From the sequence record LR756502.1: a stretch of DNA of 64,000 bases; one strand, given 5' to 3'. The position numbers and the translations under genes are program-made. The notes beneath the pieces are model-generated. The model ran no database searches. It was not told the DNA's origin and worked only from the letters and a program-made list of their open reading frames with translations. Of this stretch, positions 9,152 through 63,933 are shown in pieces (the first letter of the stretch is position 1; the number at the start of each line of letters is the position of its first letter).

Positions 9152-10894
9152 ATGATAATATGTGAAATAGGAATTCGAGGATATAAGTCGTTTGGTAACA
9201 ATGAGCAGGTCTTAAATCTCAAGACTGATAAAGGTGAATTATTACTCTTGGTTGGTAATAATGGGAATGGTAAGTCATCTCTCTTGGAGTCATTTGAGTA
9301 TTGTTTATATGGTAAAGTTAAATCAGGTAAAGCTAAAAAATGGAATAAACTATCATCATTACCAAATAGGATAAATGGTGAATTGCAGAATAGAATTAAG
9401 TTTATTTCAAATGGTGTAGAGATTGAGGTAAAAAGGGGTATATCTCCTAGTATTCTTGAGTTATGGGAGAATGGCATTTTAAATGAGAGAGCTGGTAAAG
9501 CTAATCTTGATGAGAAGATAGAGAAGTATATAGGATTGGATGTTGAGACATTTAAATCATTTATATCTTTAAGTGTGAATGACTTTAAAAACTTTATATC
9601 TCTATCAAATGAAGAAAAACAATTACTTCTTGATAAGTTATTTAACCTTGAGGTTATTAACATATTAAACAATATTCTAAAGGATATCAATAAGAATAAT
9701 AAAATAAGAATGGCTTCCTTGGATTCAGAAATTAGAACACTAGATGAGTCTGTTGATTCTATTAAGAGGTCTATTCAGAAGGCTATTGAAAGAGAGAAGG
9801 AAGAAGCTAAAATTCTACTTGAAAGAGAGAAGGTTGATATTCAACTTGAAATTGATAAACTTACCGAAGAGATGAACTCTAAGAAAGATGATTATAAATC
9901 ATTGAAGGAGAAAATTGATAAGATAAAGGAGAAGGAGAATGAATTAAATGAAGAAATTGATAAGGAGAAGAAACAGTATATAAATACTCAAAACGATATC
10001 AAAAACGTTCAGAAAGAGATTGACTTATATGATTCTGGTAAATGCCCAACTTGTAAAACAGATTTTACTGAATCAGAACACTTTTCAAATTTAAGAAGCG
10101 CTTTGGTTGAGAAAAAAGTCGGGTTTGAATCTATCAAAGTAGAGATAGAAGAAAACATTAGACTAGTTAAAGAAAAACAAGTTAAGTTGAAATCAATATC
10201 TGATAAAACTACAACTTCTTTTAATGATCTAAACTTTCTTCTTAGAAACTATAAGTCTCAAATAGATAAACTAGTTCAAAAGAAATCAGATGAGTCTACT
10301 CCTCTTGTCACAAAACCATCTATTAATATTCAAGAGTTTCAAAATACAATTGATGAACTTACTCAAAAGAGATCTATTGGTTTTGATAACTCTACTATCT
10401 GTAAAGAGAAGGAAATGTTTTATAAGGAGTTGAATAAGATATTTGGTGAAGATGGTGTTAAGAAATCGATAATATCTGGTATTATTAAGCCAATTAATCA
10501 TTTTATTGCCGAGAATACTAAGAAGATGGGTCTACCATTTGATGTTAGATTGGATGAGACATTTACTGCTGAGATAAGACAACTCGGTTCAATAATAGAA
10601 CATGATTCACTATCAACAGGTGAGACTAAGAAGGTAAATATTGCTATATTAATAGCTTATTTAAAGTTAATACGAACTAAGAAGCATATAAATATTCTAT
10701 TTTTGGATGAGGTATTCTCTTCAATAGATATTGAGGGCATTGATTCAATATTGGCTTTGTTGAAGTCATTTGCTAATGATTATAATATAAATATACTTGT
10801 AGTTCATCATGCTATTCTAAATCAGGAAATGTTCGATAGGATATTGAAGATAAACAAAGAGATATTCTCTTCAATAGAAGAGATAGTATATTAA
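9152..10894 (+). CDS. sbcC: gp46/SbcC/Rad50-like recombination ATPase
   Basis: Walker A GNNGNGKSS, coiled coils, CPTC zinc hook, LSTGE signature, LFLDE Walker B, H-loop. Confidence 0.92.
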   Translation: MIICEIGIRGYKSFGNNEQVLNLKTDKGELLLLVGNNGNGKSSLLESFEYCLYGKVKSGKAKKWNKLSSLPNRINGELQNRIKFISNGVEIEVKRGISPSILELWENGILNERAGKANLDEKIEKYIGLDVETFKSFISLSVNDFKNFISLSNEEKQLLLDKLFNLEVINILNNILKDINKNNKIRMASLDSEIRTLDESVDSIKRSIQKAIEREKEEAKILLEREKVDIQLEIDKLTEEMNSKKDDYKSLKEKIDKIKEKENELNEEIDKEKKQYINTQNDIKNVQKEIDLYDSGKCPTCKTDFTESEHFSNLRSALVEKKVGFESIKVEIEENIRLVKEKQVKLKSISDKTTTSFNDLNFLLRNYKSQIDKLVQKKSDESTPLVTKPSINIQEFQNTIDELTQKRSIGFDNSTICKEKEMFYKELNKIFGEDGVKKSIISGIIKPINHFIAENTKKMGLPFDVRLDETFTAEIRQLGSIIEHDSLSTGETKKVNIAILIAYLKLIRTKKHINILFLDEVFSSIDIEGIDSILALLKSFANDYNINILVVHHAILNQEMFDRILKINKEIFSSIEEIVY

Positions 10895-13429: not shown

Positions 13430-13636
13430 ATGGCAATACCAATTATGGGTCCAGTTGGACCAATGGGACCTCCCGGAGCTCCTGGATTATCAGTTGATGC
13501 GCTTGTTGAGTATACAGATATTCTATTTAGTTTAATGGGTGTTGATATAACCTTTGATAGATTTCAATCGATGTCTACTGGTGAGAGACTTCAATTTGTA
13601 AGAGATTTAAAAATTAATAAAATAATAAATGAATAA
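13430..13636 (+). CDS. mini-protein with a collagen-like start and C-terminal RxxKI motif
   Basis: GPV-GPM-GPP-GAP-GLS triplets; ends RDLKINKIINE. Confidence 0.65.
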   Translation: MAIPIMGPVGPMGPPGAPGLSVDALVEYTDILFSLMGVDITFDRFQSMSTGERLQFVRDLKINKIINE

Positions 13637-13871
13637 TAATATGATAATTTCTTTTGATCCAGCAAATTCTACTGGAGGCCTTGCTTTATCTCAAGTGGGT
13701 ACTGGTACTAGTTGGGTAAAAATGCCATCTGATAATGATATGGTAGATTTTTGTGAATTAGTTTTAGCTGTATTGGGACATGATATTACGTATCAAGATT
13801 TTCAAAAAATGTCTAAAGTAGAAAGAAATTCTTTACTTAGAGATATAAAAATTAAAAGAGTATTAGACTAA
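13629..13871 (+). CDS. paralog of 13430-13636 with a different N-terminus
   Basis: Shared C-half (LGHDITYQDFQKMS..ER...RDIKIKRVL vs MGVDITFDRFQSMS..ER...RDLKINKII). Confidence 0.65.
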   Translation: MNNNMIISFDPANSTGGLALSQVGTGTSWVKMPSDNDMVDFCELVLAVLGHDITYQDFQKMSKVERNSLLRDIKIKRVLD

Positions 13872-14068
13872 TGTTAATAATAAAAGTGGATGAAAAAGAG
13901 ACTATTGAGAAGGCTCTTAAGAGATATAAGAGAAAATTTGATAAGTCTCAAGTAGTTAAACAACTTCGTGAAAGGAAGCAATTTACTAAAAAGTCAATAA
14001 GAAAAAGAGAACAACTTAAAAAGGCTATCTATGTTCAAGATAAGTTTGGGTCTCCAGAAAATGATTAA
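13871..14068 (+). CDS. rpsU: 30S ribosomal protein bS21 (Bacteroidota type)
   Basis: MLIIKV...IEKALKRYKRKFDK...LRERKQF.K.S..KR...KA.Y; Tyr at position 54. Confidence 0.95.
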   Translation: MLIIKVDEKETIEKALKRYKRKFDKSQVVKQLRERKQFTKKSIRKREQLKKAIYVQDKFGSPEND

Positions 14069-14548: not shown

Positions 14549-15259
14549 ATGGATACTAAAAAGAACTACTACGGAATACTTGGAGTTAATCATGACTCAA
14601 CAGAAAAAGAGATAAAGAAAGCCTATTATAAGCTATCTTTTACACACCATCCTGATAAATCAGGTGATCCGGTGATATTTAATGAAATAAATGAAGCATA
14701 TAACATACTATGTGGTGAATCTAAAACAGATTACGACCTTAAAAGTAGATATGGTAAGAATTACAATGAGTATTTTGAGTTATTTGATATAAAGGTTGAC
14801 TTTACTCACGATGATGGTAAGGAGAAAATAGAAGCATTTAAGAGAAATTCAATACTAAATATACCAATAGAAGTAGATGATACTTTCAATGGGTCAATTG
14901 AGTATGAAAGATGGGTTAAATGTAAAACTTGTGATGGTAGTGGTAAGGATTTATCATCAAAAATAGTCATAAAGGATAATAACGGTAACGTATTAAAGAC
15001 CTTTGATGCTGATGATGGGTGTGACTTCTGTGAGGGTTCTGGTAAAGATTTTAGAGGTGGTCCTTGTTCTTTCTGCTCTGGTAAGGGTAAGGTAGGTCTA
15101 ACCCCTTGTAAGACTTGTAATGGTGAAAAGAGAGTATTGGGTAAGCAAAAACTAAAAGGTCTTAAGCTTGATGGTGTTGAAACTAAGATAGAGGCTATGG
15201 GTCACTACTCAAAGGATGAGGCTGGTAAGGCTGGATATGTTCTTTTAATTAAAAAGTAA
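14549..15259 (+). CDS. dnaJ: DnaJ-like co-chaperone (J domain plus zinc finger, shortened C-terminus)
   Basis: NYYGILGV...HPDK J domain; four CxxCxGxG/K repeats. Confidence 0.9.
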   Translation: MDTKKNYYGILGVNHDSTEKEIKKAYYKLSFTHHPDKSGDPVIFNEINEAYNILCGESKTDYDLKSRYGKNYNEYFELFDIKVDFTHDDGKEKIEAFKRNSILNIPIEVDDTFNGSIEYERWVKCKTCDGSGKDLSSKIVIKDNNGNVLKTFDADDGCDFCEGSGKDFRGGPCSFCSGKGKVGLTPCKTCNGEKRVLGKQKLKGLKLDGVETKIEAMGHYSKDEAGKAGYVLLIKK

Positions 15260-15264
15260 TTAAA

Positions 15265-15296
15265 TTTGGTGGATTGAAATAAGTTCCTTATATTTG
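15265..15296 (+). promoter_or_regulatory. Bacteroidota housekeeping-sigma promoter (-33 TTTG, -7 TATATTTG)
   Basis: TTTG 15265-15268, 20-nt spacer, TATATTTG 15289-15296. Confidence 0.8.
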
Positions 15297-15327
15297 TATA
15301 TAATTAACCACTTAAACTATAACCACT

Positions 15328-15534
15328 ATGTTTAACTCAAAATTAAAGGACTTCGGTGTCTTAAAAATCGATAGAAATATCGTGAAAGTGTTTGAAACAA
15401 CAACACAATACTCTAATCTTAATGTTGGTCAAGAAATTGTAGACGCTCGATGGGCAGGCAATTGTATTCTTGTAAACTTAAAAGACGGTAAGGTACGTAG
15501 ATACTCTACTCTTAGTGTATATACTACAATCTAA
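15328..15534 (+). CDS. hypothetical beta-rich protein
   Basis: 68 aa, first gene after a host-type promoter. Confidence 0.6.
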   Translation: MFNSKLKDFGVLKIDRNIVKVFETTTQYSNLNVGQEIVDARWAGNCILVNLKDGKVRRYSTLSVYTTI

Positions 15535-15582
15535 TCTAAATTTGAAATAATTAGTACTAACCAAATAAACCCACTAAATCCT

Positions 15583-16143
15583 ATGAAAATGATAAAAAAC
15601 TTGCTTATTGGTCTAATGACCTTGATTACGTTAAATTCCTTTGCTACACCTGTAGTACATGCTGTTATTCGTGGAACAACAATAAGTGTTACTTGTAATG
15701 TTGGTGATACTTTGAAATTCTATGCGACCACCGCTTCAATGTATGGTGTTACAATAAATACTACATTGGTAGTCACACCACACTCTGTAATAGCTCCGTT
15801 ATACTACATTGGGTATTATGTTATTGTTGGTGGTGAGACATCATTTATTATTAATTCAAGTGTTAATTGGTCAGGAACAATCACAGTTAATTCTGGTGTT
15901 GGAATTAATGAGTTTTCTGATACTAATATTATTGAGATATTCCCAAACCCAGTTGTTGACTTCTTAAAAATTAAGACTACTGAAAAGACAAAGGTAAGTA
16001 TTTTTAATATCTCTGGCCAATTAGTATTATCTAAAGATATTGATGAAGCTGGAACCACCGAAATAGATATGACTACATTTACAAACGGTATCTACTTTGT
16101 TGTTGTTGGTGGTGATAAAGCAAAGAAGATTGTAAAACAATAA
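15583..16143 (+). CDS. secreted protein with a T9SS type-A C-terminal sorting domain
   Basis: Sec signal peptide MKMIKNLLIGLMTLITLNSFA; CTD IFPNPV.D.L.I...IFNISGQLV...IDMTTFTNGIYFV...KKIVKQ. Confidence 0.9.
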   Translation: MKMIKNLLIGLMTLITLNSFATPVVHAVIRGTTISVTCNVGDTLKFYATTASMYGVTINTTLVVTPHSVIAPLYYIGYYVIVGGETSFIINSSVNWSGTITVNSGVGINEFSDTNIIEIFPNPVVDFLKIKTTEKTKVSIFNISGQLVLSKDIDEAGTTEIDMTTFTNGIYFVVVGGDKAKKIVKQ

Positions 16144-16162
16144 CCTATTTGAATAAATTGAT

Positions 16163-16196
16163 AAAAAAGGAGACTAAATTAGTCTCCTTTTTTTTT
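16163..16196. terminator. bidirectional intrinsic terminator
   Basis: AAAAGGAGACT-AAATT-AGTCTCCTTTT with A/T tracts on both sides, between convergent genes. Confidence 0.85.
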
Positions 16197-16198
16197 AT

Positions 16199-19100
16199 TT
16201 AAGGTCCAACGAAGATATCTAACGCAGATGCTTCATAGGTTGGGTTTGTTACAATACCACCACCAATGCCTATACCAACTCCACTTATTGGTGTGAATGA
16301 TTGTTGTGTATGAACACTTCCTAATCCAATACTTATATTGTCTATGAAAGAGAAGTTAGAGTTTGTATAATCTATGAATGGTGCTATTCCTTGCCAAGGG
16401 ATAGATACTCCTTTATAAATATTGTCATCAAGGAAGTATTGGAAGAATGGTATCATATCCACCTCATAGTATTTTAGATTATCCATTACTACCTTAGACT
16501 GATAATATCCATCAGTTGTAGAATTGTCTGATATATCATCAAAACTAGTTCCCAAATCATCATTACCTAATAACTTCATTGATAGTGATGGTTTGTTATA
16601 GAAATATTCATACTTTTTAATACCTGGTGTTTCTAAGTGATTTACATTTTCATAGATTGGTAGATATGACATTACTGGGTAATATACATATGTTACTATT
16701 CCAAAAACTCCTAAATCGAATGATATAGTATTCCTAAATTGATTAATATTACTAAAATTTAGTACTGGTATAGGGTGTAAGTTTGATACCGGATCTATAT
16801 ATGTTATTCCTGTTGCTGTTGTTTCGGAATACTCTGATGCTTGATAATATGTCGAACTAGTTCCTGTTGAGTATGATTTTATATCAAGCTCAACAACAGT
16901 GTATCTGTTGTTACTTATATCAATATTGGTATTATTTAATATTGATCCACTCATTGTTGATGTTATTATTAGCTCCTCACCTTTTATTTGATACTCATCA
17001 CTAACACCACTATTGTATGTTGGGTCCTCAATACTTCTTTCAAACTTAGAGTATGTTCCTGAGAATGTCCATCCGAAGCTAAGGAATGTATTCAAACCAA
17101 TTCCTGTATCACCATTCATATCAAAAGGACTCTCAAACTCAGAACCTATTCCAATTTGGTCTTGGTATATCTTATACTTTGTGCCTAATTTGTAATTTTT
17201 CTTATTGAAAGTATATGAATCTCTGAATGTTGATATACTTGATAGTACATCATTTGTTGGATATCCATATAGATTATTCTGAGTATATTCTAACTTAGCA
17301 GTAGTATCATATAACCTAACAGGCTTGCCTATATTAACTGCACTTGTGTTATAGTAGTTGACATCAATCCATGAGTTAAACTGAAATACTTCTTCTGATG
17401 ATCCGGTATTTTGTGATGATACTTTACCAGCAATATTATTATCATAGAATCTAAAATTCTGAATAAGTCCAGTTGCTCTTGTATTAGAGGATGTTCCTCC
17501 TTCTAGTACCGATGAGTTTGCAAAAGCCTTGTCAAGTACTAGTAGATTATCATCCACTACATATGTTACATTTGCATTACCATCGTAGTTTGGATTTATT
17601 GACTTGTCGAATTTATCAATACTTATAACATCACCTACAACATACCCATGTGGTGTACTAAAAGATAGACCTAGTTTCCCATCAAATGTACTATCGATTC
17701 CAAAATCTGATCCTGTTATGTAGTATGTGTCATCAAAAACATATGATTCATATGTTGAGTTGAAGTGACCACCATCAAATATACCATCAATCCAGTGAGT
17801 ATCAACCATTTCAGTTATTCTAGGGAAGCCTTTGAATAGACCATAGTTCCAAATACCAGTATAGTATCCATTTAGGAACGCTCCACTTAACCAAACATTC
17901 TTTGTTACTTTAATCTTATGATTATCAGAGTCTTTTTCAATTCTTCTGAATGGGAAACTAACATCAGTTTCAACAATAATTGATGAGTCTGATTTGTTTA
18001 TTATAGTAAAGTAACCCTTTAATAGCTTTCTGGTCTCATTAATATCTATAGCTACAATATTACTAATAGAGATTCTGTCGCCTATTTCAAATTGACCAGC
18101 TGATGATGTAGGTCCAGTTAATTGAATTCTCCATCTTCTATCTGCTATTGTTCTAAATGCAACTCCAACATTATCAAACTCATATATCTGTGTATCAACT
18201 CTCCATCCACTATTCCATACACCATTTTCCCATACACCCGCTCTAAATGTTCCATTTCCGAATTGAGCATTTATTAGATTTAGGTTTGATGGTGTTCCAT
18301 TTATAGTTGACCCACTACCAACAATAAAACTAAAAGTCATACCATCAGTTGCTGTTCCTAATATTTGTAAATATGTTGGATCTGAGTATACATCACTTTC
18401 AGTGAATAAGAATTGTTCATTATTATTTGGATGGTATCCACCTTCAATTGTTGGATTTATAATACCCGCAACAAACCCACTGACATCACTTGTTGTTCCA
18501 CCAACAATGTATAAGAACTGACCATTTCCTTGCAATCCATATATTTGATGTGGTGTTGATTGAGTTGAAAATTGACTTTGAGTTAGTGTATATAGTGCTC
18601 CCGCTCCTATAGCCCCTGCGTATGAGTCTCCCTGATATATACTAAATCCATCACTAGCACTACCACCACTTGTTATATACTCAAAGTTTAGGTTATAGTA
18701 GCTATATATAACAGATTTTGAAATATAGTTTGTTGATATATCATTGTTTGTTGATAGTCCGGTTGCTCCCATTGTTGGGACTGGTTTATTTGTCCACCAA
18801 AATGTATTTATTGACTTTTCATATGACCAACCATCATAGTTAACATCATTTAATGACGCTGTTGTTCCTGGACTAAATCTTTTATAACCAGATATTTTCC
18901 AATCTAACTCATTGACCTTAATATTTGTTATTCTAGGAGATGTTGATGAATTACCACACATTGATCCGGTTGCAAATATAGATATTGAGTATACTGTTGA
19001 TGTGTTTGATGAAGGACTTGAATAGAAGAAGTATCTAGCACCAGCCGCTGCATCAACACTAACCACTCTATCAATTCTAGCATCAGAGAATATTGAGTTG

Positions 19101-19345
19101 CTTGACCAGTTATATGACGCTGATAGACCCATTGTAGTAAAGTCTCCTTTTACTTCCAACTCAAATTGATACATCTTGTTGCTCTTAAATGTGTGTGATG
19201 CGGTTAGGGCATATCTTAGTGTGCCATTTGACGCTGATGCTGCTAAAAGAGTACCTGTATTTCTTCTTTGTATACCAAGTACTGATACATTGGCGTTATA
19301 TCCCCAATATGCATTAGTTACTAAGTATGATGTTATCCATGCCAT
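16199..19345 (-). CDS. large putative virion structural protein
   Basis: 1048 aa, S/T/G-rich; central [WF]xxGx repeats (FRAGVWENGVWNSGW, WLSGAFLNGYYTGIWNYGLF). Confidence 0.6.
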   Translation of the reverse strand: MAWITSYLVTNAYWGYNANVSVLGIQRRNTGTLLAASASNGTLRYALTASHTFKSNKMYQFELEVKGDFTTMGLSASYNWSSNSIFSDARIDRVVSVDAAAGARYFFYSSPSSNTSTVYSISIFATGSMCGNSSTSPRITNIKVNELDWKISGYKRFSPGTTASLNDVNYDGWSYEKSINTFWWTNKPVPTMGATGLSTNNDISTNYISKSVIYSYYNLNFEYITSGGSASDGFSIYQGDSYAGAIGAGALYTLTQSQFSTQSTPHQIYGLQGNGQFLYIVGGTTSDVSGFVAGIINPTIEGGYHPNNNEQFLFTESDVYSDPTYLQILGTATDGMTFSFIVGSGSTINGTPSNLNLINAQFGNGTFRAGVWENGVWNSGWRVDTQIYEFDNVGVAFRTIADRRWRIQLTGPTSSAGQFEIGDRISISNIVAIDINETRKLLKGYFTIINKSDSSIIVETDVSFPFRRIEKDSDNHKIKVTKNVWLSGAFLNGYYTGIWNYGLFKGFPRITEMVDTHWIDGIFDGGHFNSTYESYVFDDTYYITGSDFGIDSTFDGKLGLSFSTPHGYVVGDVISIDKFDKSINPNYDGNANVTYVVDDNLLVLDKAFANSSVLEGGTSSNTRATGLIQNFRFYDNNIAGKVSSQNTGSSEEVFQFNSWIDVNYYNTSAVNIGKPVRLYDTTAKLEYTQNNLYGYPTNDVLSSISTFRDSYTFNKKNYKLGTKYKIYQDQIGIGSEFESPFDMNGDTGIGLNTFLSFGWTFSGTYSKFERSIEDPTYNSGVSDEYQIKGEELIITSTMSGSILNNTNIDISNNRYTVVELDIKSYSTGTSSTYYQASEYSETTATGITYIDPVSNLHPIPVLNFSNINQFRNTISFDLGVFGIVTYVYYPVMSYLPIYENVNHLETPGIKKYEYFYNKPSLSMKLLGNDDLGTSFDDISDNSTTDGYYQSKVVMDNLKYYEVDMIPFFQYFLDDNIYKGVSIPWQGIAPFIDYTNSNFSFIDNISIGLGSVHTQQSFTPISGVGIGIGGGIVTNPTYEASALDIFVGP

Positions 19346-19349
19346 TATC

Positions 19350-19358
19350 TATATATTA
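19350..19358 (-). promoter_or_regulatory. TAATATATA element
   Basis: Exact motif 4 nt before the start at 19345. Confidence 0.6.
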
Positions 19359-19373
19359 CTTTATTTCTTCTCA

Positions 19374-22300
19374 TTATCTTGGGCCGGATGATGGTGGTAA
19401 TATTACAGCTGCTGCCGCATCTATCAATGTAGGTGCATCTGTAGCATCTTCTGTGAATATATTCCAAACGTGACAAGATGATGTACCTGACCAAGACATA
19501 CCTCTAAATAAAATTTGTCTTATATAATCATCTGTTACTTGACCATCTCCAGTCAATGTAAATGATGATCCATACCAGTTACCATTTCTCCAAGTACCAT
19601 TTTCCCAGAACACATTAAATGCGTTCATGTAGTTTGCGACACCATTCTTCCATATCATACCAATTCCTGTTCCAAGTAGGAATTTACCATCATTCCACTT
19701 TGAAATATAAAAATCACTACTATCTAAATTTCCATTTTCCCAATAACAGTTATCATCAAAATTAAATGTTGATTGAGTTGACCCATTTCTCTTCACATAT
19801 GGATTGAAGGAGCTAGCTTTAAATGTTCCAGATGTGAACCTACCATCCAACCAAACAGAGTTTAACATTTCACCAGATGGATGACTAAATGTTCCAGTTG
19901 TCCAAAGTATGTTTTTAAGATTGGCCTTTTTAGTTATCTTTTTCTCTGTAAACGCTCTTTGTAACTCTGTAAATATCTTTTTGTCTTTAACAAATTTATC
20001 TTTAACATCTGTAACTGTTCCGTTTCTCCATAATCCATAGTATGAACTACTGAATGAATCTACGAAATTTGATGGATTTGAACATGTTGTTCCTAAAAGT
20101 GATATTGTTGAGTATGTTCCACTTCCTTCAAACTCACCTGATGTTAGAACACCATTGTTCCAAACTCTTCCTTTGAATTTTCCTCCATTGAACTCTCCTG
20201 TATACCAAGTTGAGTTTGTTAACCCGCTTCCGTTTCCAAATTCACCACCATTAAATATACCATCTGCCCAAGAGTAATCTGTTGAGTATGTTGATGTGCT
20301 CATAGTATATCCATATCCTGATATGAATTTTCCACCATTGAATGTTCCATTTAACCACTTGGCGTTATTTGATTCAAAAGATCCTCCATTGAAGTATCCT
20401 CCATTCCAAATCGATTCAGAGAATTCATCACTACCATCTTCTGTATAGATATTCGCTCCAAATCTACCCGCCTTGAATATTCCATTATTCCAAGTTACTA
20501 ATCTTGGTGGTTTTGATCCAGAGAATATCCAGTCTGTATTTGTTGCAAAAATATTAGCATTTTCTACAATACCATCATTGAATATACCACCATAGAAATT
20601 GGTATCTGTTGATGATATACCAACATCACCTAATACCCCATTACTAAATGTTCCATTAAACCAATCTGATAAGTACATCTTACCGCTCTTAAATGTTCCA
20701 TTTTCCCACCCACTCTTATAAAAACTACCTCCATTAAATGTACCATTTATCCAAGAATATCTATTATTATAGAAGTGACCAACTATATTACCAGATCTCC
20801 AAGATGATTGGAACTTCTCTGATTGATAAGTTATTGCTCCTGTTGATCCACCGCCAGCATTTGACTTATAAAATAATCCATTTTGGAAATTACCATCTTC
20901 CCATCTAGACTCTCTAAATACACCATTTGAGAATGTTTGTCCAAGCCAAGAGGAGTTATAATAAATACCATCTCTCCATGTGTCATTGCCACTTGTTAGA
21001 AAGCTATATACGAATAGACCAGAGTTTATATTATTACCAGTCTTTCTTAATATCATTTCAGTGAACATTAGGTCCTTTATTGCTGGTAAGTCTGTGAAGT
21101 CAATATCCCTATTATCATAAGATTGATTATAAACTACTGAATCTTTCATATATGCTCTTCTGAACATACCAGATTTTATATTTGACTTATTTACTTTTAC
21201 ATTATGTATGTAATTATATCTATTTCTAACTTCAACTCCATCTATTGCTGTTGTGAAATATGATGATGCTGTTAGTGTTGATATAACAGATGATGTTACT
21301 GATATTTCCTCCAAAATAAGTGATCTTGGTGGTAAAATGTCAATAACCTTATATGTGTCAGGTAAAGTTGTTGTATTTGATAGAATATCAACTTGGTCAA
21401 TAGAGTTTAAATACACTATAGATCCAACCTTTATCATATCGTCATCTATTGATACTGGAGATGGCATTGATATTGTCAACTTATTATCACCAATACTTGT
21501 TATTGATATATCATAATCACCTCCATATGTGGATAGATTTGGTATAACATTGTCGTAGTTATGACTTATATTACTTCCACTGTTCCAATCGGATGTCTCG
21601 AATAAACCACTTCTGAAATCAGAGTCTATTATATAAGCATCCGTTGTATCAACAGTTCCATTAGCAACTCCTAAATTATCTATGTGATCTGATGTTGTTA
21701 TAATATCTATTGATGGTAGTTGGTTAGTATTAATTACTACCGATGTGTCACCTGACATTATGTATTCATTCTCTTTTGATGTACTTAGTACTACTGTGTA
21801 CTCAAAAGAGTGTTTACCTGATAAACGATCATCATGATAAACTGCGTCATTTAGTATGAACTTTCTATCAAGAAAGTTTAAAACACTATTGTCGCTAACT
21901 AAAGCTCCTTTTATATAAAACTGATCCTTGTGTCTAAGTCTATTGTAACTATCCTCTGATATATAAAACTTATATGCTATATAGTTTATTGATGTATCTG
22001 ATGAGTCTGGTGTAATAGTCCATTCATCATATGCTAATACCTTCATAATACGGTCACTATTAAACTTTGATCCATAGAATAAAGACTCTATATAGTGTGA
22101 GTTAACAGATTTCGTTCTTATAACTCTAGAATTATTTAACCTAGAATTCTTTATTTCTGATGTTTTAATATCAGCACTTTCGAATGAACAGTTGTTAAAC
22201 TCACCACCTAGAATATTAATATTTAGTGATTGTGTTAGTGATAGTATATATGATTCAACTGTTGAAAATGCTGCTGATTGAGTTCCTAATAAACTATGAA

Positions 22301-23348
22301 AGAAATTTCCATTTAATATAAGTGACTTATCTATTTCTGAGTCAATAACATAGTTATATCCAAATCCTTTATTATTTGATTGATTTATTTTCTGGAATGG
22401 TAGTCCATATTCATCAATATCAGCGAAATAGCTTTCATTTGAATTTGAAACCGAATTCATACTACCAGTAGCCCATATTGTATTAAGTAGAGTACCTGTA
22501 TTCCAATTAGAATCAACGCCCTCCCACTTAATTTTCTTATCTTGTCTACCAAAAAGGCCTGCATTCCAGTCTCCTTTGAAGTTACCATCTCTGAAATTTG
22601 CCTTTGATATAATTGGTCTGAAATATGTTACATCAACAACCCAGTTACCATCTTCAAACTTATATACATATCCTTCTTTGAACTCCATTCCACCATAGGT
22701 AAATGTAGCGTTCATTATTTTAATTCTTTCGTTTGAAAGAGATGAAGAGTATGTACCTAAGAATGATGTGAAGTTTGTTGAGAAATCACTTGTTACATTT
22801 GTCCAACTATATGTACCTCCTTTTATAAAGAATCCTGGTGACCCTGTTAGTCCTGTATTTTCTCCAAATCCAACTGTTCCTGCATAATCGTTATCTGTGT
22901 AGATAACATTATCCTGGTATTGGTCAAATCTAAAACCAAATGAACCTCCTTCTGAGGTTAGCATTCTATTTACATATTTGAATTCAGTATCATCTCTTAC
23001 TGGATAAACTCTGACAAAACTATCTATACTATCATCATTCCAAATAGAATCACCTGTATAATCTATATCTAGTGTTATTTTACACTTATCTACTTCAAGT
23101 ACTTTATATCCATCTCTGCCTTTCTTATACTTATCATCTTTTATAAGAAGGTCACTATCATAATTTCCATTTAGTATGAAAACTCTATCACCTACTCTTA
23201 TATTAGAATTAACCTCTGTATAGATTCCAGTTTTTAAATATCCTTTAATATCAATTGGCTCTACCCAATTGACAAGTCTGGTACTGAATGGTTTATTAGA
23301 CAGATTTTTTTTAATTTCTAAAGGATTTACTGAAATTAACTTCGCCAT
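19374..23348 (-). CDS. large putative virion protein with WxxGxFxxG pentapeptide repeats (beta-helix)
   Basis: 1324 aa; dozens of [WF]xxGx units in the C-terminal 40%. Confidence 0.65.
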   Translation of the reverse strand: MAKLISVNPLEIKKNLSNKPFSTRLVNWVEPIDIKGYLKTGIYTEVNSNIRVGDRVFILNGNYDSDLLIKDDKYKKGRDGYKVLEVDKCKITLDIDYTGDSIWNDDSIDSFVRVYPVRDDTEFKYVNRMLTSEGGSFGFRFDQYQDNVIYTDNDYAGTVGFGENTGLTGSPGFFIKGGTYSWTNVTSDFSTNFTSFLGTYSSSLSNERIKIMNATFTYGGMEFKEGYVYKFEDGNWVVDVTYFRPIISKANFRDGNFKGDWNAGLFGRQDKKIKWEGVDSNWNTGTLLNTIWATGSMNSVSNSNESYFADIDEYGLPFQKINQSNNKGFGYNYVIDSEIDKSLILNGNFFHSLLGTQSAAFSTVESYILSLTQSLNINILGGEFNNCSFESADIKTSEIKNSRLNNSRVIRTKSVNSHYIESLFYGSKFNSDRIMKVLAYDEWTITPDSSDTSINYIAYKFYISEDSYNRLRHKDQFYIKGALVSDNSVLNFLDRKFILNDAVYHDDRLSGKHSFEYTVVLSTSKENEYIMSGDTSVVINTNQLPSIDIITTSDHIDNLGVANGTVDTTDAYIIDSDFRSGLFETSDWNSGSNISHNYDNVIPNLSTYGGDYDISITSIGDNKLTISMPSPVSIDDDMIKVGSIVYLNSIDQVDILSNTTTLPDTYKVIDILPPRSLILEEISVTSSVISTLTASSYFTTAIDGVEVRNRYNYIHNVKVNKSNIKSGMFRRAYMKDSVVYNQSYDNRDIDFTDLPAIKDLMFTEMILRKTGNNINSGLFVYSFLTSGNDTWRDGIYYNSSWLGQTFSNGVFRESRWEDGNFQNGLFYKSNAGGGSTGAITYQSEKFQSSWRSGNIVGHFYNNRYSWINGTFNGGSFYKSGWENGTFKSGKMYLSDWFNGTFSNGVLGDVGISSTDTNFYGGIFNDGIVENANIFATNTDWIFSGSKPPRLVTWNNGIFKAGRFGANIYTEDGSDEFSESIWNGGYFNGGSFESNNAKWLNGTFNGGKFISGYGYTMSTSTYSTDYSWADGIFNGGEFGNGSGLTNSTWYTGEFNGGKFKGRVWNNGVLTSGEFEGSGTYSTISLLGTTCSNPSNFVDSFSSSYYGLWRNGTVTDVKDKFVKDKKIFTELQRAFTEKKITKKANLKNILWTTGTFSHPSGEMLNSVWLDGRFTSGTFKASSFNPYVKRNGSTQSTFNFDDNCYWENGNLDSSDFYISKWNDGKFLLGTGIGMIWKNGVANYMNAFNVFWENGTWRNGNWYGSSFTLTGDGQVTDDYIRQILFRGMSWSGTSSCHVWNIFTEDATDAPTLIDAAAAVILPPSSGPR

Positions 23349-23407: not shown

Positions 23408-23439
23408 TTTGGTAATATATTTTATTATCCTTATATTTG
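23408..23439 (+). promoter_or_regulatory. Bacteroidota housekeeping-sigma promoter
   Basis: TTTG 23408-23411, 20-nt spacer, TATATTTG 23432-23439. Confidence 0.8.
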
Positions 23440-23842: not shown

Positions 23843-24592
23843 ATGAATAAAAAGAAGATATTAATATTTAGTGGTGCTGGTGTATCCGCTGAAAGTGGAA
23901 TAAAAACCTTTAGAGATTCACTAAATGGCCTTTGGTATAATTTTGATGTAAAGGAAGTGGCTTCAATTGAAGGATGGAGGAAAGATAAATCAAAAGTACT
24001 TGACTTTTACAACAAAAGAAGGTCTGAGATGAAGTCTGTTGATCCAAATAAGGCACATACTACTATTGCTGACTTGGAAAAATATTTCGATGTTACTATT
24101 GTAACACAAAATGTTGATAACCTTCATGAGAGAGCTGGGTCTAGTAATATTATACATTTACATGGCGAATTATCTAAGGCTAGAGGATCACTATATGAGA
24201 ATAAAACATCACCACTTGATACAGTAGTTGATATTGGATATAATGATATTAAAATTGGTGATAAGTGTTCGGTAACTGATTCCCAATTACGACCACATAT
24301 AGTTTGGTTTGGTGAGGTACTAGATAGTACTAATTTAGATAATGCTAAAAAGGCAGCTGTCGATGCTGATGTTTGTATTGTTGTTGGTACTTCAATGCAG
24401 GTTTCTCCAGCAAATACTATACCATTTTTGACAAAAGAAAGTTCTATAATCTACTATGTTGATCCAAGTGAGATTAACTTCTATGTTCCTGAGTTCAGAT
24501 CCCAAAATTTTCACCACTTAAACGAACCTGCCTCAACTGGTATGGTTAAAGTGTATAATGAATTGTTAGAAACATTTATTAATAAAAAATAA
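23843..24592 (+). CDS. cobB: Sir2/CobB NAD-dependent deacylase
   Basis: GAGVSAESGIKTFRD, TQNVDNLHERAG, HGEL, RPHIVWFGE, VGTS motifs. Confidence 0.93.
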   Translation: MNKKKILIFSGAGVSAESGIKTFRDSLNGLWYNFDVKEVASIEGWRKDKSKVLDFYNKRRSEMKSVDPNKAHTTIADLEKYFDVTIVTQNVDNLHERAGSSNIIHLHGELSKARGSLYENKTSPLDTVVDIGYNDIKIGDKCSVTDSQLRPHIVWFGEVLDSTNLDNAKKAAVDADVCIVVGTSMQVSPANTIPFLTKESSIIYYVDPSEINFYVPEFRSQNFHHLNEPASTGMVKVYNELLETFINKK

Positions 24593-28076: not shown

Positions 28077-29189
28077 TTATTTATTTTTGAATTCTTTTTT
28101 ATCATTTGATATGTAGAACTTATCGAAGTCATAGTATTTATCATAAACTTCTCTAATCTTCTTAAGAGTAACCTTATCTAGAATCTCGTTGACTGTCCAT
28201 CCTTCTGGATTGATCCATTGATTAACATTCTTATATCTTAATATTTCATCTTTTTGCATTCTAACCTTGTAATATTCCTTAACAAGATCAAATCTCTCTT
28301 TTGTTAAATACTTATCTGGATTTGATATTACATCTTTAACACATGCAATAACCTCATCCGCATTCTTATTTGATGTTTGTGTTGATATTGTGTTAAGTCC
28401 TTGACCATTCATTCTTGATTGATAACAACTTACATAGTATACAAGACCTCTTTTTTCTCTAATTTCTTGGTATAATGGTGACATCAATCCTAATGATAAC
28501 ATAGCATTTATGTAGTGTACATATGCGAAGTCCTCTTCAATTACAGGTGATAGAATCGCAATTGAACTTTTATCTTTGAAATCATTATTAAGTTCTAAAT
28601 CTACCTTGTGATTGCCGAATTCAATTTTATTTTCAAATTTCCTAACGGCGAAATCAAGATCATCATTTTTATATTTCTTGTTCTTTGATACATTTATTAT
28701 TTTTGAAGGCTTAGCATATTGTAGCTCAAAGTAGTTAAGACAATCCATATACTTTAGGTTTTCTAGATCACTTCTAAGTCCAATAGGATCATAGTCTTTA
28801 AATAGCTTTCTTGATAGATTTAACATATGTGATTGTGTTTGGTCATTAAAGCAATCCATGTATTCTTCTAATACAATTTTTCTCTCATTCTCGAATTGTT
28901 CTTTAGTCACATTAAATTGACCAAGTAAATCCATAAACTCACCTTTCCATTTGTTTACTTTTTCATCAAGTCCTTGTATATAGAATACAATTTCATTTGA
29001 CGATGTGTACGCATTCCAATCAATACCATCCTTATCAAAGGCTTCTTGTAGATGATCGAAGTTTTTACACATTAAATGTTCCATTAAATGTGATATTCCA
29101 TAAATTCCTGGTTTCTCTAGATTTGTAGATCCCTCATAGATAACGTAGAATCCAGATAAATCAGTTTGTGACTTTAAATTAGTAATCAT
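28077..29189 (-). CDS. M16 family zinc peptidase
   Basis: Inverted zincin GISHLMEHL, NAYTS, ERKIVLEE; C-domain LYQEIREKRGLVY. Confidence 0.9.
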   Translation of the reverse strand: MITNLKSQTDLSGFYVIYEGSTNLEKPGIYGISHLMEHLMCKNFDHLQEAFDKDGIDWNAYTSSNEIVFYIQGLDEKVNKWKGEFMDLLGQFNVTKEQFENERKIVLEEYMDCFNDQTQSHMLNLSRKLFKDYDPIGLRSDLENLKYMDCLNYFELQYAKPSKIINVSKNKKYKNDDLDFAVRKFENKIEFGNHKVDLELNNDFKDKSSIAILSPVIEEDFAYVHYINAMLSLGLMSPLYQEIREKRGLVYYVSCYQSRMNGQGLNTISTQTSNKNADEVIACVKDVISNPDKYLTKERFDLVKEYYKVRMQKDEILRYKNVNQWINPEGWTVNEILDKVTLKKIREVYDKYYDFDKFYISNDKKEFKNK

Positions 29190-29241: not shown

Positions 29242-29272
29242 TTTGTAGATATTTTATTTATCCTTATATTTG
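29242..29272 (+). promoter_or_regulatory. Bacteroidota housekeeping-sigma promoter
   Basis: TTTG 29242-29245, 19-nt spacer, TATATTTG 29265-29272; ATG only 4 nt downstream. Confidence 0.75.
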
Positions 29273-62843: not shown

Positions 62844-62913
62844 AATAAATTTGGTGGAATTAAAACTTTACCATATATTTGTACTAATAATAAAAAAAGG
62901 GACTTAAAAAGTT

Positions 62914-63096: not shown

Positions 63097-63168
63097 GGTG
63101 GTTATCGTCCAAAGGAAGGATGTGTCCCTGTGAAGGACAAGATGTGGTATCGAGATCCATTAACCACC
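63097..63168 (+). tRNA. tRNA-His (GTG)
   Basis: G-1, acceptor GTGGTTA/TAACCAC, anticodon arm TGTCC-CTGTGAA-GGACA, C73. Confidence 0.85.
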
Positions 63169-63173
63169 CAAAA

Positions 63174-63246
63174 GGATCCTAAGCTAACTTGGTAGAAGCG
63201 TATGCCTGAAGAGCATGAGGATTTGGTTCGAAACCAAAAGGATCCA
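63174..63246 (+). tRNA. tRNA-Phe (GAA)
   Basis: Acceptor GGATCCT/AGGATCC, TATGC-CTGAAGA-GCATG, T arm TTTGG-TTCGAAA-CCAAA. Confidence 0.9.
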
Positions 63247-63256
63247 CAAAAAATAT

Positions 63257-63333
63257 GGTGATTGTAGCTCAATTGGTAGAGCGCTTGACTGTGAGTCAAG
63301 AGGTAGTGGGATCGAATCCCACCTTTCACCCCA
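63257..63333 (+). tRNA. tRNA-His (GTG), second copy, CCA encoded
   Basis: CTTGA-CTGTGAG-TCAAG; acceptor GTGATTG/CTTTCAC has two T:T mismatches. Confidence 0.85.
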
Positions 63334-63335
63334 AT

Positions 63336-63407
63336 GGAGGATTAGCTGAGATGGTTTAGCGTCTGGTTGAAGACCAGAAGACCTCGGTTCGATTCCGGGA
63401 TTCTCCA
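63336..63407 (+). tRNA. tRNA-Phe (GAA), second copy
   Basis: GGAGGAT/ATTCTCC, TCTGG-TTGAAGA-CCAGA, TTCGATT T loop. Confidence 0.9.
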
Positions 63408-63416
63408 CAAAAATAT

Positions 63417-63495
63417 ACACTCGCTCATTGGCGTGACCAGTCGGTTCCCCGATAAAGCGTAAGCGTGGTTAAGAGTTCGAATCTCTTCGGGTGTT
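63417..63495 (+). tRNA. aberrant tRNA-like element (anticodon undetermined)
   Basis: Acceptor ACACTCG/CGGGTGT and T arm AAGAG-TTCGAAT-CTCTT are intact; anticodon arm GTCGG-TTCC-CCGAT has a 4-nt loop; long variable region. Confidence 0.55.
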
Positions 63496-63500
63496 CAAAT

Positions 63501-63571
63501 ACGTGATACTGGCAAGGTGTCGGTCAGGTCTCCAAAACCTCGATGGGTGGGTTCAATTCCTACATCACGTG
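63501..63571 (+). tRNA. tRNA-Trp (CCA)
   Basis: ACGTGAT/ATCACGT, AGGT-CTCCAAA-ACCT, GTGGG-TTCAATT-CCTAC. Confidence 0.85.
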
Positions 63572-63589
63572 CTAAAAGAAAGAAAAGAA

Positions 63590-63619
63590 ATGAAAACAAA
63601 ACGAAAATATAAAAGATAA
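63590..63619 (+). other. 9-codon Lys-rich micro-ORF (MKTKRKYKR*) followed by a hairpin
   Basis: AAA at every second codon; hairpin 63620-63645; directly before three tRNA-Lys genes. Confidence 0.35.
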
Positions 63620-63660
63620 CTGCTCACTGGATTTTCCATGGGCAGTATAATATAACACAA

Positions 63661-63746
63661 GTGTCCGTGAGTGAATGGTTGAAACTACCAGTCTTTTAAA
63701 CTGGCTACCGAAAGGTACAATGTGGGTTCGAATCCCACCGGGCACA
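63661..63746 (+). tRNA. tRNA-Lys (TTT) with a long variable arm and type-II-like body
   Basis: GTGTCCG/CGGGCAC, CCAGT-CTTTTAA-ACTGG, V arm TACC-GAAA-GGTA, A73. Confidence 0.85.
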
Positions 63747-63758
63747 CAAACATACAAT

Positions 63759-63847: not shown

Positions 63848-63848
63848 A

Positions 63849-63929: not shown

Positions 63930-63933
63930 CAAA

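What the first reader, a model, noticed from the sequence alone, without database searches (positions are those of the whole stretch)
15265..16196. Phage-encoded cargo of the host Type IX secretion system in its own early transcription unit
Seen: a perfect Bacteroidota promoter, a 68-aa ORF, then a 186-aa protein with a Sec signal peptide, an approximately 85-aa beta-sandwich-like domain (SVTCNVGDTLKF, cupredoxin/Ig-like) and a textbook type-A T9SS CTD, closed by a terminator. Known: the CTD routes proteins through the T9SS of Bacteroidota to the surface or medium. Inference: the phage exports a minimal protein via the host T9SS, for example to mask its receptor (superinfection exclusion), jam secretion or gliding, or remodel the surface. 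This is rarely described for a phage and independently pins the host phylum.
Basis: partly seen in the sequence, partly recalled or inferred. Interest (0 to 1): 0.75.

Follow-up and report, generated by a model that had tools for sequence, protein, structure and literature searches.

The report
Megaphage gene for a T9SS-secreted protein
A 642-kb bacteriophage of Bacteroidota carries a small, conserved gene whose product has every sequence mark of a protein exported through its host's type IX secretion system; it is one of four such cargo genes in this phage, which suggests that the phage re-dresses the surface of the infected cell, but the function is untested.

Summary
Window 15265-16196 holds a Bacteroidota-type promoter, a conserved 68-aa ORF, a 186-aa ORF and a two-way terminator. 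The 186-aa protein has a Sec-type signal peptide, a roughly 85-aa beta-sandwich, a flexible linker and a type-A T9SS C-terminal domain (CTD). The CTD scores about twice the curated cut-offs (TIGR04183 46.3 vs 23; PF18962 50.9 vs 27).

The window is part of LR756502.1, a curated 642-kb megaphage with a predicted Bacteroidetes host, so a host-contig chimera is very unlikely. The same unit lies between a DnaJ-like gene and two convergent genes of about 1,000-1,400 aa in eight other megaphage loci, although the sister phage's copy lacks the 68-aa ORF and one short contig does not reach the DnaJ gene.

The passenger domain is an unnamed family with a weak cupredoxin-like fold and no copper ligands. 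It is not phage-specific: it also occurs in Bacteroidota chromosomes and on small integrative elements.

This is the phage's only type-A cargo, but the genome also encodes three type-B cargo proteins, including a SprB-like adhesin.

Phage-borne T9SS cargo has been reported before (Bellas 2020; de Jonge 2019). "Early" timing and any exclusion or jamming role remain inference. Verdict: a new member of a known, rare kind, of moderate interest.

The parts
15265..15296 (+). Bacteroidota sigma-A-type promoter: -33 TTTG, 20-nt spacer, -7 TATATTTG
   Evidence: The consensus is taken from PMC6847099. The same extended motif (TTTGGTGGA...TTCC[G/T]TATATTTG) lies upstream of the 68-aa ORF in all 8 related loci that have that ORF.
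15328..15534 (+). 68-aa ORF: a conserved small protein of unknown function with no signal peptide
   Evidence: It is 53-78% identical in 5 other megaphage loci. The family has 34 clusters of 55-104 aa, most of them 67-70 aa, on contigs of up to 642, 617 and 577 kb. There is no Pfam, NCBIfam, PHROG or PADLOC hit. It is absent from LR745206.1.
15583..16143 (+). Gene for the 186-aa T9SS type-A cargo protein (stop codon included)
   Evidence: There are 25 full-length homologues at 36-58% identity, all carrying PF18962. A profile search of a library clustered at 50% identity returned several dozen full-length representatives among its top 150 hits.
15583..15645 (+). Sec-type signal peptide, residues 1-21, with predicted signal peptidase I cleavage after NSFA (A21|T22). 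There is no lipobox cysteine.
   Evidence: Read by eye from the sequence. Conserved across the family. Modelled as helix 2-18. SignalP was not run.
15646..15897 (+). Passenger domain, residues 22-105: an eight-stranded beta-sandwich of an unnamed family, with C38, G41 and D42 invariant
   Evidence: The domain-only model has pLDDT 93.5 and pTM 0.83. The best PDB fold matches are cupredoxin-type and weak: EfeO 7wgu_A at E 1.9e-3 and TM 0.51, and pseudoazurin, plastocyanin and amicyanin at E 0.01-0.05. There is no significant Pfam hit (the best, SMP_LBD at 17.6 bits, is below its cut-off of 27), no PDB-sequence hit and no BFVD hit better than E 1e-3.
15898..15936 (+). Flexible linker, residues 106-118
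   Evidence: pLDDT is below 50 for residues 106-113 in the full-length model. Length varies across the family.
15937..16140 (+). Type-A T9SS C-terminal sorting domain, residues 119-186
   Evidence: TIGR04183 46.3 bits against a cut-off of 23. PF18962 50.9 bits against 27. Fold match to the CTD of Tannerella forsythia mirolase, 8qb1_A: TM on target 0.69, rmsd 2.1 A over 88 columns. P121, N122, P123, G145, G169 and Y171 are invariant.
16163..16193 (.). Two-way intrinsic terminator between the cargo gene and the convergent 1048-aa gene: A-run, 14-pair hairpin, T-run
   Evidence: The downstream 70 nt fold at -20.7 kcal/mol, and a hairpin with different stem letters sits at the same place in all 9 syntenic loci. 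Rfam gives only sub-threshold noise here.
14549..15259 (+). Context: the upstream syntenic neighbour, a DnaJ-like protein (J domain plus CXXCXGXG zinc finger, 236 aa). No functional link has been shown.
   Evidence: Synteny is shown.
16199..23348 (-). Context: two convergent, clade-specific large genes of unknown function (1048 aa at 16199-19345; 1324 aa at 19374-23348). No functional link has been shown.
   Evidence: There is no Pfam, PHROG, PADLOC or PDB hit. The only phage-record match is the sister phage LR745206.1. Both genes are syntenic in the related loci that extend far enough to show them.

Best explanation
The region is a compact accessory transcription unit of a 642-kb Bacteroidota megaphage (LR756502.1).

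**Shown by sequence**
- A host sigma-A-type promoter drives a conserved 68-aa cytoplasmic protein and a 186-aa pre-protein, and a two-way terminator closes the unit.
- The pre-protein has a Sec signal peptide, a roughly 85-aa non-enzymatic beta-sandwich passenger, a flexible linker and a type-A T9SS CTD.

**Inferred from established T9SS biology**
- Host RNA polymerase transcribes the unit.
- Sec exports the pre-protein and signal peptidase I cuts after A21.
- In the periplasm the CTD is recognised by the host T9SS (the SprA/Sov translocon with the PorV shuttle).
- The CTD is removed by the PorU-type sortase. The small passenger is then either released or anchored on the outer face of the outer membrane.

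**Inferred, least certain**
- The passenger is a binding module that changes the surface of the infected cell. It would act alongside the phage's three type-B cargo proteins, which include a SprB-like adhesin.
- The most likely effect is to occupy or mask a surface structure, so that further phages adsorb less well, or adhesion and gliding of the infected cell change.

**My probabilities**
- About 0.85 that it is a genuine T9SS-exported phage protein.
- About 0.3 that its role is exclusion or receptor masking specifically.
- The confidence given for this field (0.6) is for the composite claim: exported by the host T9SS and acting at or outside the cell surface.
For: - **CTD:** the HMM scores are about twice the curated cut-offs and the domain sits at the very C terminus. 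The CTD fold matches a solved T9SS CTD. The signal peptide is conserved.
- **Phage origin:** the window is 100% identical to LR756502.1. That record is a curated, circularised 642-kb genome with a predicted Bacteroidetes host. G+C is a uniform ~30%.
- **Conservation:** the gene occupies the same position in 9 megaphage loci from different samples, with intact ORFs, a conserved promoter and a structurally conserved terminator.
- **Wider T9SS use:** the phage carries three more Sec-plus-CTD proteins, all type B (TIGR04131, 42-51 bits against a cut-off of 35). One has at least 10 SprB repeats, and the sister phage has matching genes.
- **Mobile accessory gene:** the same family is carried by small integrative elements (Cro/C1-type HTH gene, cargo gene, resolvase, tyrosine integrase) and is present as a second copy near an IS1595-family transposase gene in a 617-kb phage.
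- **Diversification:** passenger and CTD identities are decoupled between homologues. One pair is 71% / 37% identical and another 40% / 63%. This pattern is expected of proteins exposed to surface conflicts.
- **Background:** mutations in gliding and T9SS-linked genes give phage resistance in Flavobacterium, so T9SS-dependent surface structures matter for adsorption (PMC9804748).
Against: - No expression, localisation or secretion data exist, and the host is uncultivated and unidentified.
- The passenger has no recognisable function: there is no significant Pfam, PHROG or PADLOC match and no PDB-sequence match.
- The fold matches are weak (E > 1e-3, TM 0.4-0.6).
- The family also sits in ordinary chromosomal loci, so it has a cellular role that need not concern phages.
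- No link to the neighbouring large genes could be shown, and their function is unknown.
- The signal peptide was judged by eye only.
Confidence: 0.6

Rival explanations
1. Nutrient or metal-acquisition helper. The passenger is a cupredoxin/EfeO-like ligand-binding module displayed outside the cell, which hands a metal or other nutrient to a TonB-dependent receptor and so boosts the infected cell's metabolism (an auxiliary metabolic gene).
For: - The best fold match is the cupredoxin-like domain of the metal-binding protein EfeO, followed by blue copper proteins.
- One chromosomal homologue (L006) lies between a DtxR-type metal-dependent repressor and a TonB-dependent receptor.
- Related megaphages are reported to carry SusC/TonB-dependent receptor genes (PMC9723777).
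Against: - The fold matches are weak (E 2e-3 to 5e-2).
- The only invariant residues are C38, G41 and D42. No conserved His or Met set exists for a copper site.
- There is no cupredoxin HMM hit.
- The receptor neighbourhood appears in only 1 of 3 chromosomal loci examined.
- No TonB-dependent receptor lies next to the phage copies.
Confidence: 0.13
2. Secretion jamming. The protein matters as a T9SS substrate and not through its passenger. Made in bulk, it competes for the translocon, PorV or the sortase, and lowers export of host adhesins, enzymes or receptors.
For: - The passenger is minimal and has no catalytic signature.
- The same phage encodes a 116-aa protein that is only a signal peptide plus a type-B CTD. 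That protein has no passenger at all and looks like a pure competitor.
Against: - The passenger is strongly conserved in its core, and the model is confident (pLDDT 93.5), which points to selection on the passenger itself.
- Cellular genomes keep the same family.
- The phage also exports large adhesin-like cargo, and blocking the system would defeat that.
Confidence: 0.07
3. Passive hitch-hiker. The gene was picked up from a host or an integrative element and has no role for the phage.
For: The family occurs in chromosomes and integrative elements. In a neighbour-joining tree the phage copies are mixed with a chromosomal clade.
Against: The gene is in the same position in 9 divergent megaphage loci at 31-58% protein identity. 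All copies are intact, and the promoter and terminator are conserved. This indicates long retention under selection.
Confidence: 0.06
4. Virion decoration. The two beta-sandwich domains act as Ig-like decoration or adhesion modules on the phage particle, and the CTD is not used for secretion.
For: Ig-like domains are common on phage particles (general knowledge). The gene lies next to two very large genes of unknown function that could be structural.
Against: A cleavable Sec signal peptide sends the protein out of the cytoplasm, where virions assemble. The CTD matches the secretion-signal HMMs and fold specifically. There is no PHROG match to structural proteins.
Confidence: 0.03
5. Assembly artefact: a stretch of host DNA joined to a phage contig.
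For: None was found beyond the fact that homologues exist in bacteria.
Against: The window is 100% identical to a curated circular phage genome. G+C is uniform. The same junctions on both sides occur in independent assemblies from other samples.
Confidence: 0.01

Closest known systems
Cellular T9SS type-A cargo proteins of Bacteroidota (TIGR04183 / PF18962), for example mirolase of Tannerella forsythia, whose CTD structure is 8qb1
   Same: Sec signal peptide, passenger, then a terminal ~70-aa beta-sandwich CTD. The HMM scores pass the curated cut-offs and the CTD fold matches.
   Different: It is encoded by a phage. The passenger is a single ~85-aa domain with no enzymatic signature, whereas well-studied cargo are mostly proteases, glycosidases or adhesins.
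T9SS-CTD genes of 'Cryophage' (Bellas et al. 2020, PMC7468147)
   Same: Phage-encoded proteins with type-A sorting domains, described as variable between phage variants and proposed to hijack the host T9SS.
   Different: Those are enzymes or PA14 proteins (an endoglucanase, a GH39 and a PA14 protein) located in variable islands. This one is a minimal passenger of an unnamed family at a fixed syntenic position in a megaphage lineage.
T9SS sorting-domain proteins near crAss-BACON ORFs in gut phage cluster 2 (de Jonge et al. 2019, PMC6949934)
   Same: T9SS sorting domains in genomes of phages of Bacteroidetes.
   Different: Those are associated with BACON repeats and lie near head genes. No BACON domain is present here.
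Small exported superinfection-exclusion proteins of phages, such as Llp of T5 and Cor of phi80/N15 (from my own knowledge, not tested here)
   Same: A possible functional analogy only: a small phage-encoded protein sent to the cell envelope, encoded as a separate accessory unit.
   Different: Those are lipoproteins of Enterobacteria that block FhuA. This protein has no lipobox, uses a different export route, and gave no PHROG or PADLOC hit. Homology could not be tested by name.
Cupredoxin fold (EfeO N-terminal domain 7wgu; pseudoazurin, plastocyanin, amicyanin)
   Same: The best structural neighbours of the passenger, with the same eight-stranded sandwich topology.
   Different: The scores are weak. 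There is no cupredoxin HMM hit and no conserved His/Cys/His/Met ligand set.

Membership tests
T9SS type-A cargo (TIGR04183 / PF18962 CTD) | The CTD profile HMM is matched above the curated cut-off | tested here: met
   TIGR04183 46.3 bits against 23. PF18962 50.9 bits against 27.
T9SS type-A cargo (TIGR04183 / PF18962 CTD) | The CTD lies at the extreme C terminus of the protein | tested here: met
   The match covers residues 119-186 of 186.
T9SS type-A cargo (TIGR04183 / PF18962 CTD) | An N-terminal Sec signal peptide provides the first export step | tested here: met
   Positive n-region, 11-residue hydrophobic core and an NSFA|T cleavage motif, conserved across the family. Modelled as helix 2-18. 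Judged by eye; no SignalP run.
T9SS type-A cargo (TIGR04183 / PF18962 CTD) | The CTD has the beta-sandwich fold of solved CTDs | tested here: met
   8qb1_A (mirolase CTD): TM on target 0.69, rmsd 2.1 A, 88 columns, E 9.7e-4. CTD pLDDT is about 83-91.
T9SS type-A cargo (TIGR04183 / PF18962 CTD) | Export depends on the host T9SS and the CTD is cleaved | not testable with these tools
   The host is unidentified and there are no expression or proteome data.
Phage-encoded gene (as opposed to host DNA) | It lies inside a bona fide phage genome, with conserved phage neighbours on both sides | tested here: met
   100% match to LR756502.1, a curated genome. Synteny in 8 further loci.
Cupredoxins (blue copper proteins) | A conserved type-1 copper ligand set (His, Cys, His, Met) | tested here: not met
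   Only C38, G41 and D42 are invariant in the passenger, and no conserved His or Met exists.
Cupredoxins (blue copper proteins) | Membership by sequence profile | tested here: not met
   No cupredoxin family appears in Pfam or NCBIfam at E <= 1. There is no PDB sequence hit.
Cupredoxins (blue copper proteins) | Cupredoxin fold | tested here: inconclusive
   The top Foldseek hits are cupredoxin-type, but only at E 1.9e-3 to 5e-2, TM 0.4-0.6 and rmsd 4-6 A.
Early phage gene | Transcribed at the start of infection | not testable with these tools
   Only a host-type promoter can be shown. Timing needs expression data.
Known anti-phage defence or exclusion families (PADLOC, PHROGs) | A profile match to a described family | tested here: not met
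   No PHROG family matches. The only PADLOC hit is a noise-level Cas5f match at 14.3 bits.

The most novel reading that the evidence does not exclude
The unnamed passenger family is a dedicated surface-masking (superinfection-exclusion) factor of Bacteroidota mobile elements, delivered by the T9SS. In this reading these >600-kb megaphages carry a coordinated T9SS cargo set: this type-A protein, a SprB-like adhesin, an 898-aa type-B protein and a passenger-less type-B CTD. Together they would rebuild the gliding and adhesion surface of the infected cell. That would be a new class of phage-host surface takeover using a secretion system unique to this phylum.
Probability: 0.2. Interest if true: 0.75.

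Novelty: new member of a known kind. Interest (0 to 1): 0.48.

Why it matters
How phages of Bacteroidota manipulate the cell surface is almost unknown, and the T9SS builds much of that surface: adhesins, gliding machinery and enzymes.

- **What is new here:** a single small type-A cargo gene kept at one position across a lineage of the largest known phages, alongside type-B cargo genes that include a SprB-like adhesin. This suggests that surface remodelling through the host's own secretion system is a regular part of the biology of these phages.
- **Host range clue:** the cargo set narrows the likely host to T9SS-bearing Bacteroidota, and the SprB repeats and type-B CTDs suggest, from general knowledge, gliding lineages.
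- **A domain family to characterise:** the ~85-aa passenger is unnamed and is shared by phages, integrative elements and chromosomes. It is small and well-modelled, which makes it a good target for structural work.

Tried and rejected
**Searches that led nowhere**
- IMG/VR scan with the passenger-domain alignment: 3 pattern matches, none confirmed.
- The first genome contigs attempt with the 43-sequence alignment failed because no stretch was conserved enough. A closer 12-sequence alignment found one locus.
- PHROGs, PADLOC, PDB sequence search and the BFVD fold search gave nothing useful for the passenger or the 68-aa protein.
- The whole-protein fold search was dominated by generic two-domain beta-sandwich matches, so the passenger was modelled and searched alone.
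- The two large convergent neighbours could not be identified. The idea that they are receptor-binding proteins, with the cargo gene paired to them as in the T5 llp/pb5 arrangement, has no support.
- Rfam shows no known RNA element in the unit.
- No PorP/SprF-like gene lies next to the type-B cargo genes.

**Ideas considered and set aside**
- The link to a TonB-dependent receptor seen in L006 did not recur in two other chromosomal loci.
- My first statement that this is the only CTD protein in the 642-kb genome was too broad. It rested on a home-built type-A HMM. A phmmer query with a type-B CTD from locus L024 then found three type-B cargo genes, confirmed by Pfam and NCBIfam. The claim now covers type A only, and even that rests on my own HMM, not on a full TIGR04183 scan of every ORF.
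- The 73-aa ORF upstream of the cargo gene in the integrative elements is unrelated to the 68-aa ORF (24% identity). It gives a sub-threshold Trypco2 hit.

- I ran the promoter pattern TTTG-N-TANNTTTG before a paper confirmed it.
- None of the remembered protein strings was used as a query or as evidence.
Full report
**1. What is in the sequence**

Window 15265-16196 contains the elements below.
- A promoter made of TTTG, a 20-nt spacer and TATATTTG, at 15265-15296.
- A 68-aa ORF at 15328-15534.
- A 48-nt gap with no second promoter and no terminator.
- A 186-aa ORF at 15583-16143.
- A 14-pair hairpin at 16163-16193, flanked by an A-run and a T-run. It sits between the 186-aa gene and a convergent 1048-aa gene.

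The promoter fits the published consensus of the primary sigma factor of Bacteroidota, -33 TTTG and -7 TANNTTTG, refined to TAHHTTTG (PMC6847099; PMC9723704).
- It is not a chance match. The window has 12 matches against 2.1 expected, and 0 of 100 shuffles reached 12.
- The whole 642-kb genome has 83 matches against about 26 expected.
- The strict form TTTG-N18-21-TATATTTG occurs 44 times against about 3 expected.
- So a minority of transcription units in this phage carry a host-type promoter, and this unit is one of them.

**2. The 186-aa protein**

- The C-terminal 68 residues match the type-A T9SS sorting domain at about twice the curated cut-offs: TIGR04183 46.3 against 23, and PF18962 50.9 against 27.
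- The N terminus (MKMIK, then an 11-residue hydrophobic core, then NSFA|TP) reads as a signal peptidase I signal peptide and has no lipobox. It is conserved in all relatives.
- AlphaFold2 with the family alignment gives a helix at 2-18, a confident eight-stranded sandwich at 25-103 (pLDDT 92-96), a disordered linker at 106-113 and a second sandwich at 118-185.
- The second sandwich superposes on the solved CTD of Tannerella forsythia mirolase, 8qb1_A (TM 0.69 on the target, rmsd 2.1 A).
- The first sandwich was also modelled alone (pLDDT 93.5, pTM 0.83). Its nearest solved folds are cupredoxin-type: the EfeO N-domain, pseudoazurin, plastocyanin, amicyanin and CuA. The scores are weak (E 2e-3 to 5e-2, TM 0.4-0.6).
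- The passenger has no significant Pfam hit, no PDB-sequence hit and no viral-structure hit better than E 1e-3.
- Only C38, G41 and D42 are invariant in the passenger, and there is no conserved His/Met ligand set. It is therefore cupredoxin-like in shape but not a copper protein by the tests available.

**3. Phage or host?**

- The window is 100% identical to LR756502.1 (window base 1 is record base 310001).
- LR756502.1 is the 642-kb genome that Al-Shayeb et al. curated to a closed circle. They predicted that it replicates in Bacteroidetes (PMC7162821; see also PMC9723777).
- G+C is an even ~30%.
- The neighbours are typical of this phage group: an SbcC-like nuclease, an S21 homologue, a DnaJ-like protein and Sir2.
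- The order (S21) - DnaJ - 68-aa ORF - cargo gene, followed by two convergent genes of about 1,000-1,400 aa, recurs in independent assemblies:
  - a 617-kb JGI contig (L002);
  - contigs of 104, 35, 25, 19, 13 and 7 kb (L003, L007, L010, L026, L028, L027); the 7-kb contig L027 does not reach the DnaJ gene;
  - the sister phage LR745206.1 (L001), where the 68-aa ORF is absent.
  
- In all nine loci a hairpin terminator with different stem letters follows the cargo gene.
- All eight loci that have the 68-aa ORF carry the promoter in front of it. In seven of the nine loci the cargo gene also has its own copy of the promoter; the window and L003 lack it.
- A chimera is excluded for practical purposes.

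**4. The family is not phage-specific**

- A word-indexed search found 25 full-length relatives at 36-58% identity.
- A profile search of 1.84 billion cluster representatives returned several dozen full-length members of 175-210 aa among its top 150 hits. Of the 169 proteins fetched, 81 match a passenger-only HMM.
- Besides the megaphage setting, two further genomic settings appear.
  - Small integrative elements next to housekeeping genes. Their order is a Cro/C1-type HTH gene, sometimes a 73-aa Trypco2-like ORF, the cargo gene, a resolvase and a tyrosine integrase (L004, L008, L009).
  - Plain chromosomal loci. One lies between a DtxR-type repressor and a TonB-dependent receptor in a Bacteroidetes MAG (L006). 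Two lie among other T9SS cargo genes (L024, L025).
- The 617-kb phage has a second copy of the integrative-element type, near an IS1595-family transposase gene (L005).
- In a neighbour-joining tree without support values, the phage copies are not cleanly separate from a chromosomal clade.
- Passenger identity and CTD identity are decoupled between homologues (71% / 37% in one pair, 40% / 63% in another), and two distinct CTD tail types exist among syntenic phage copies.
- This pattern fits a mobile accessory gene whose two modules are exchanged or evolve at different rates.

**5. Other T9SS cargo in the same phage**

- I read the rest of LR756502.1 in separate pieces and searched 2,272 stop-to-stop ORFs.
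- A type-A HMM built from 188 diverse CTDs found only the ORF of this finding.
- A type-B CTD taken from bacterial locus L024 then found three more genes. Pfam CHU_C (41-62 bits against 27) and TIGR04131 (42-51 bits against 35) confirmed them.
- Each of the three has a signal-peptide-like N terminus:
  - an 898-aa protein;
  - a protein of about 1,670 aa with at least 10 SprB repeats and a PKD domain;
  - a 116-aa protein that is only a signal peptide plus a type-B CTD.
- No PorP/SprF-like partner gene lies beside them.
- The sister phage has four places that match the type-B mini-protein.
- Among 50,697 deposited phage records, tblastn with these four proteins finds CTD-region matches only in the two megaphages and one 4.2-kb fragment; the SprB-like query additionally gave a weak repeat-region match to a tail protein of Escherichia phage EcS1. 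This search is limited to BLAST sensitivity.
- The finding is therefore one part of a wider use of the host T9SS by this phage.

**6. How it most likely works**

Shown:
- the gene structure;
- the export signals;
- conservation in a phage lineage.

Inferred from established T9SS biology:
- Sec export and cleavage after A21;
- recognition of the CTD by the host translocon and shuttle;
- removal of the CTD by the sortase;
- release or surface anchoring of an ~85-aa passenger.

Inferred with much less certainty:
- The passenger is a binding module that alters the infected cell's surface.
- Reduced adsorption of other phages is the leading idea. The reasons are the gene's distribution on phages and integrative elements, its diversification, and the known dependence of Flavobacterium phage susceptibility on gliding and T9SS-linked genes (PMC9804748).

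The rival explanations (a metal or nutrient helper, secretion jamming, a hitch-hiker, virion decoration, an artefact) are weighed in their own sections.

**7. Comparison with what is known**

- Phage-borne T9SS cargo has been described twice.
  - Bellas et al. called the three variable CTD genes of 'Cryophage' a unique occurrence (PMC7468147).
  - de Jonge et al. noted sorting-domain proteins in a gut phage cluster (PMC6949934).
- The main text of the paper that published this genome never uses the word 'secretion', and the record is unannotated.
- This is therefore a new member of a known, rare kind. Its distinguishing features are:
  - a minimal, unnamed passenger;
  - a fixed syntenic position in the largest known phages;
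  - relatives on integrative elements;
  - company from three type-B cargo genes.

**8. Limits**

- No SignalP run was possible.
- There are no expression or proteome data.
- The host is unknown.
- The genome-wide type-A count rests on my own HMM.
- The tree has no support values.
- The functions of the 68-aa protein and of the two large neighbouring genes remain unknown.
- A short disclosure about motif strings that I wrote from memory in my reasoning is in Tried and rejected.

Noticed in passing
L020 46378-50000 and L021 1-3390 (LR756502.1 about 514378-519390, + strand); outside the window: A phage-encoded protein of about 1,670 aa with a signal peptide, at least 10 SprB repeats (PF13573, 257 bits), a PKD domain and a type-B T9SS CTD (TIGR04131 50.5 bits against 35). 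It looks like a SprB-like gliding adhesin carried by a phage.
   Followed up: partly
L022 33508-33858, - strand (LR756502.1 597508-597858); outside the window: A 116-aa protein made only of a signal peptide plus a type-B T9SS CTD, with no passenger (TIGR04131 42.1 bits against 35). The sister phage LR745206.1 has a 37%-identical copy at a similar map position. It could be a competitor for the type-B export route.
   Followed up: partly
L018 43688-46384, + strand (LR756502.1 415688-418384); outside the window: An 898-aa protein with a signal peptide and a type-B CTD (CHU_C 61.7 bits; TIGR04131 51.2). Its Ig-like repeats are rich in Thr, Gly and Pro.
   Followed up: partly
window 15265-15296, 23408-23439, 29242-29272, 62850-62881; L001, L002, L003, L007, L010, L026-L028 upstream of the 68-aa and cargo genes: The host-type promoters share more than the -33 and -7 elements: TTTGGTGGA ... 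TTCC[G/T]TATATTTG. That is more conserved than sigma-A recognition alone would need, so a phage factor may read this promoter subclass.
   Followed up: partly
L004 7589-9593; L008 6366-8370; L009 430-3702; L005 7612-8768: A small integrative-element cassette in Bacteroidota genomes: a Cro/C1-type HTH gene, a 73-aa ORF with a sub-threshold Trypco2 match (22.3 bits against 24.2; absent in L004), the cargo gene, a resolvase and a tyrosine integrase. In the 617-kb phage the 73-aa ORF is called as an N-terminal extension of the second cargo copy.
   Followed up: partly
alignment A2 (family of the 186-aa protein): Passenger identity and CTD identity are decoupled between homologues. Two CTD tail types (...KIVKQ and ...KITITR) occur among syntenic phage copies, which suggests module exchange.
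   Followed up: partly
window 63098-63930: A tRNA cluster. ARAGORN genes and Rfam (the extra one is at 63098-63168). Three genes called tRNA-Lys are unusually long at 82-89 nt, which is atypical for Lys tRNAs.
   Followed up: no
window 13430-13871: Two adjacent small ORFs (68 and 80 aa) share a C-terminal motif (DIT[F/Y]..F[Q]...[S]..ER......[D][L/I]KI), and the first begins with a collagen-like Gly-Pro-X run. LR745206.1 has a homologous 89-aa ORF.
   Followed up: no
window 13871-14068; 14549-15259; 9152-10894; 23843-24592; 28077-29189; 33802-35697; 48289-50151: Other gene content of the window: a ribosomal protein S21 homologue, a DnaJ-like protein with a zinc finger, an SbcC-like nuclease, Sir2, an M16 peptidase, an SPFH/Band-7 protein in a locally G+C-richer stretch (0.38) and an NAD-dependent DNA ligase.
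   Followed up: no
L006 4860-8874 (MAG Bacteroidetes JADJDM010000001.1): A chromosomal family member lies between a DtxR-type metal-dependent repressor with a FeoA domain and a TonB-dependent receptor. This hints at a metal-related cellular role for at least this copy.
   Followed up: partly
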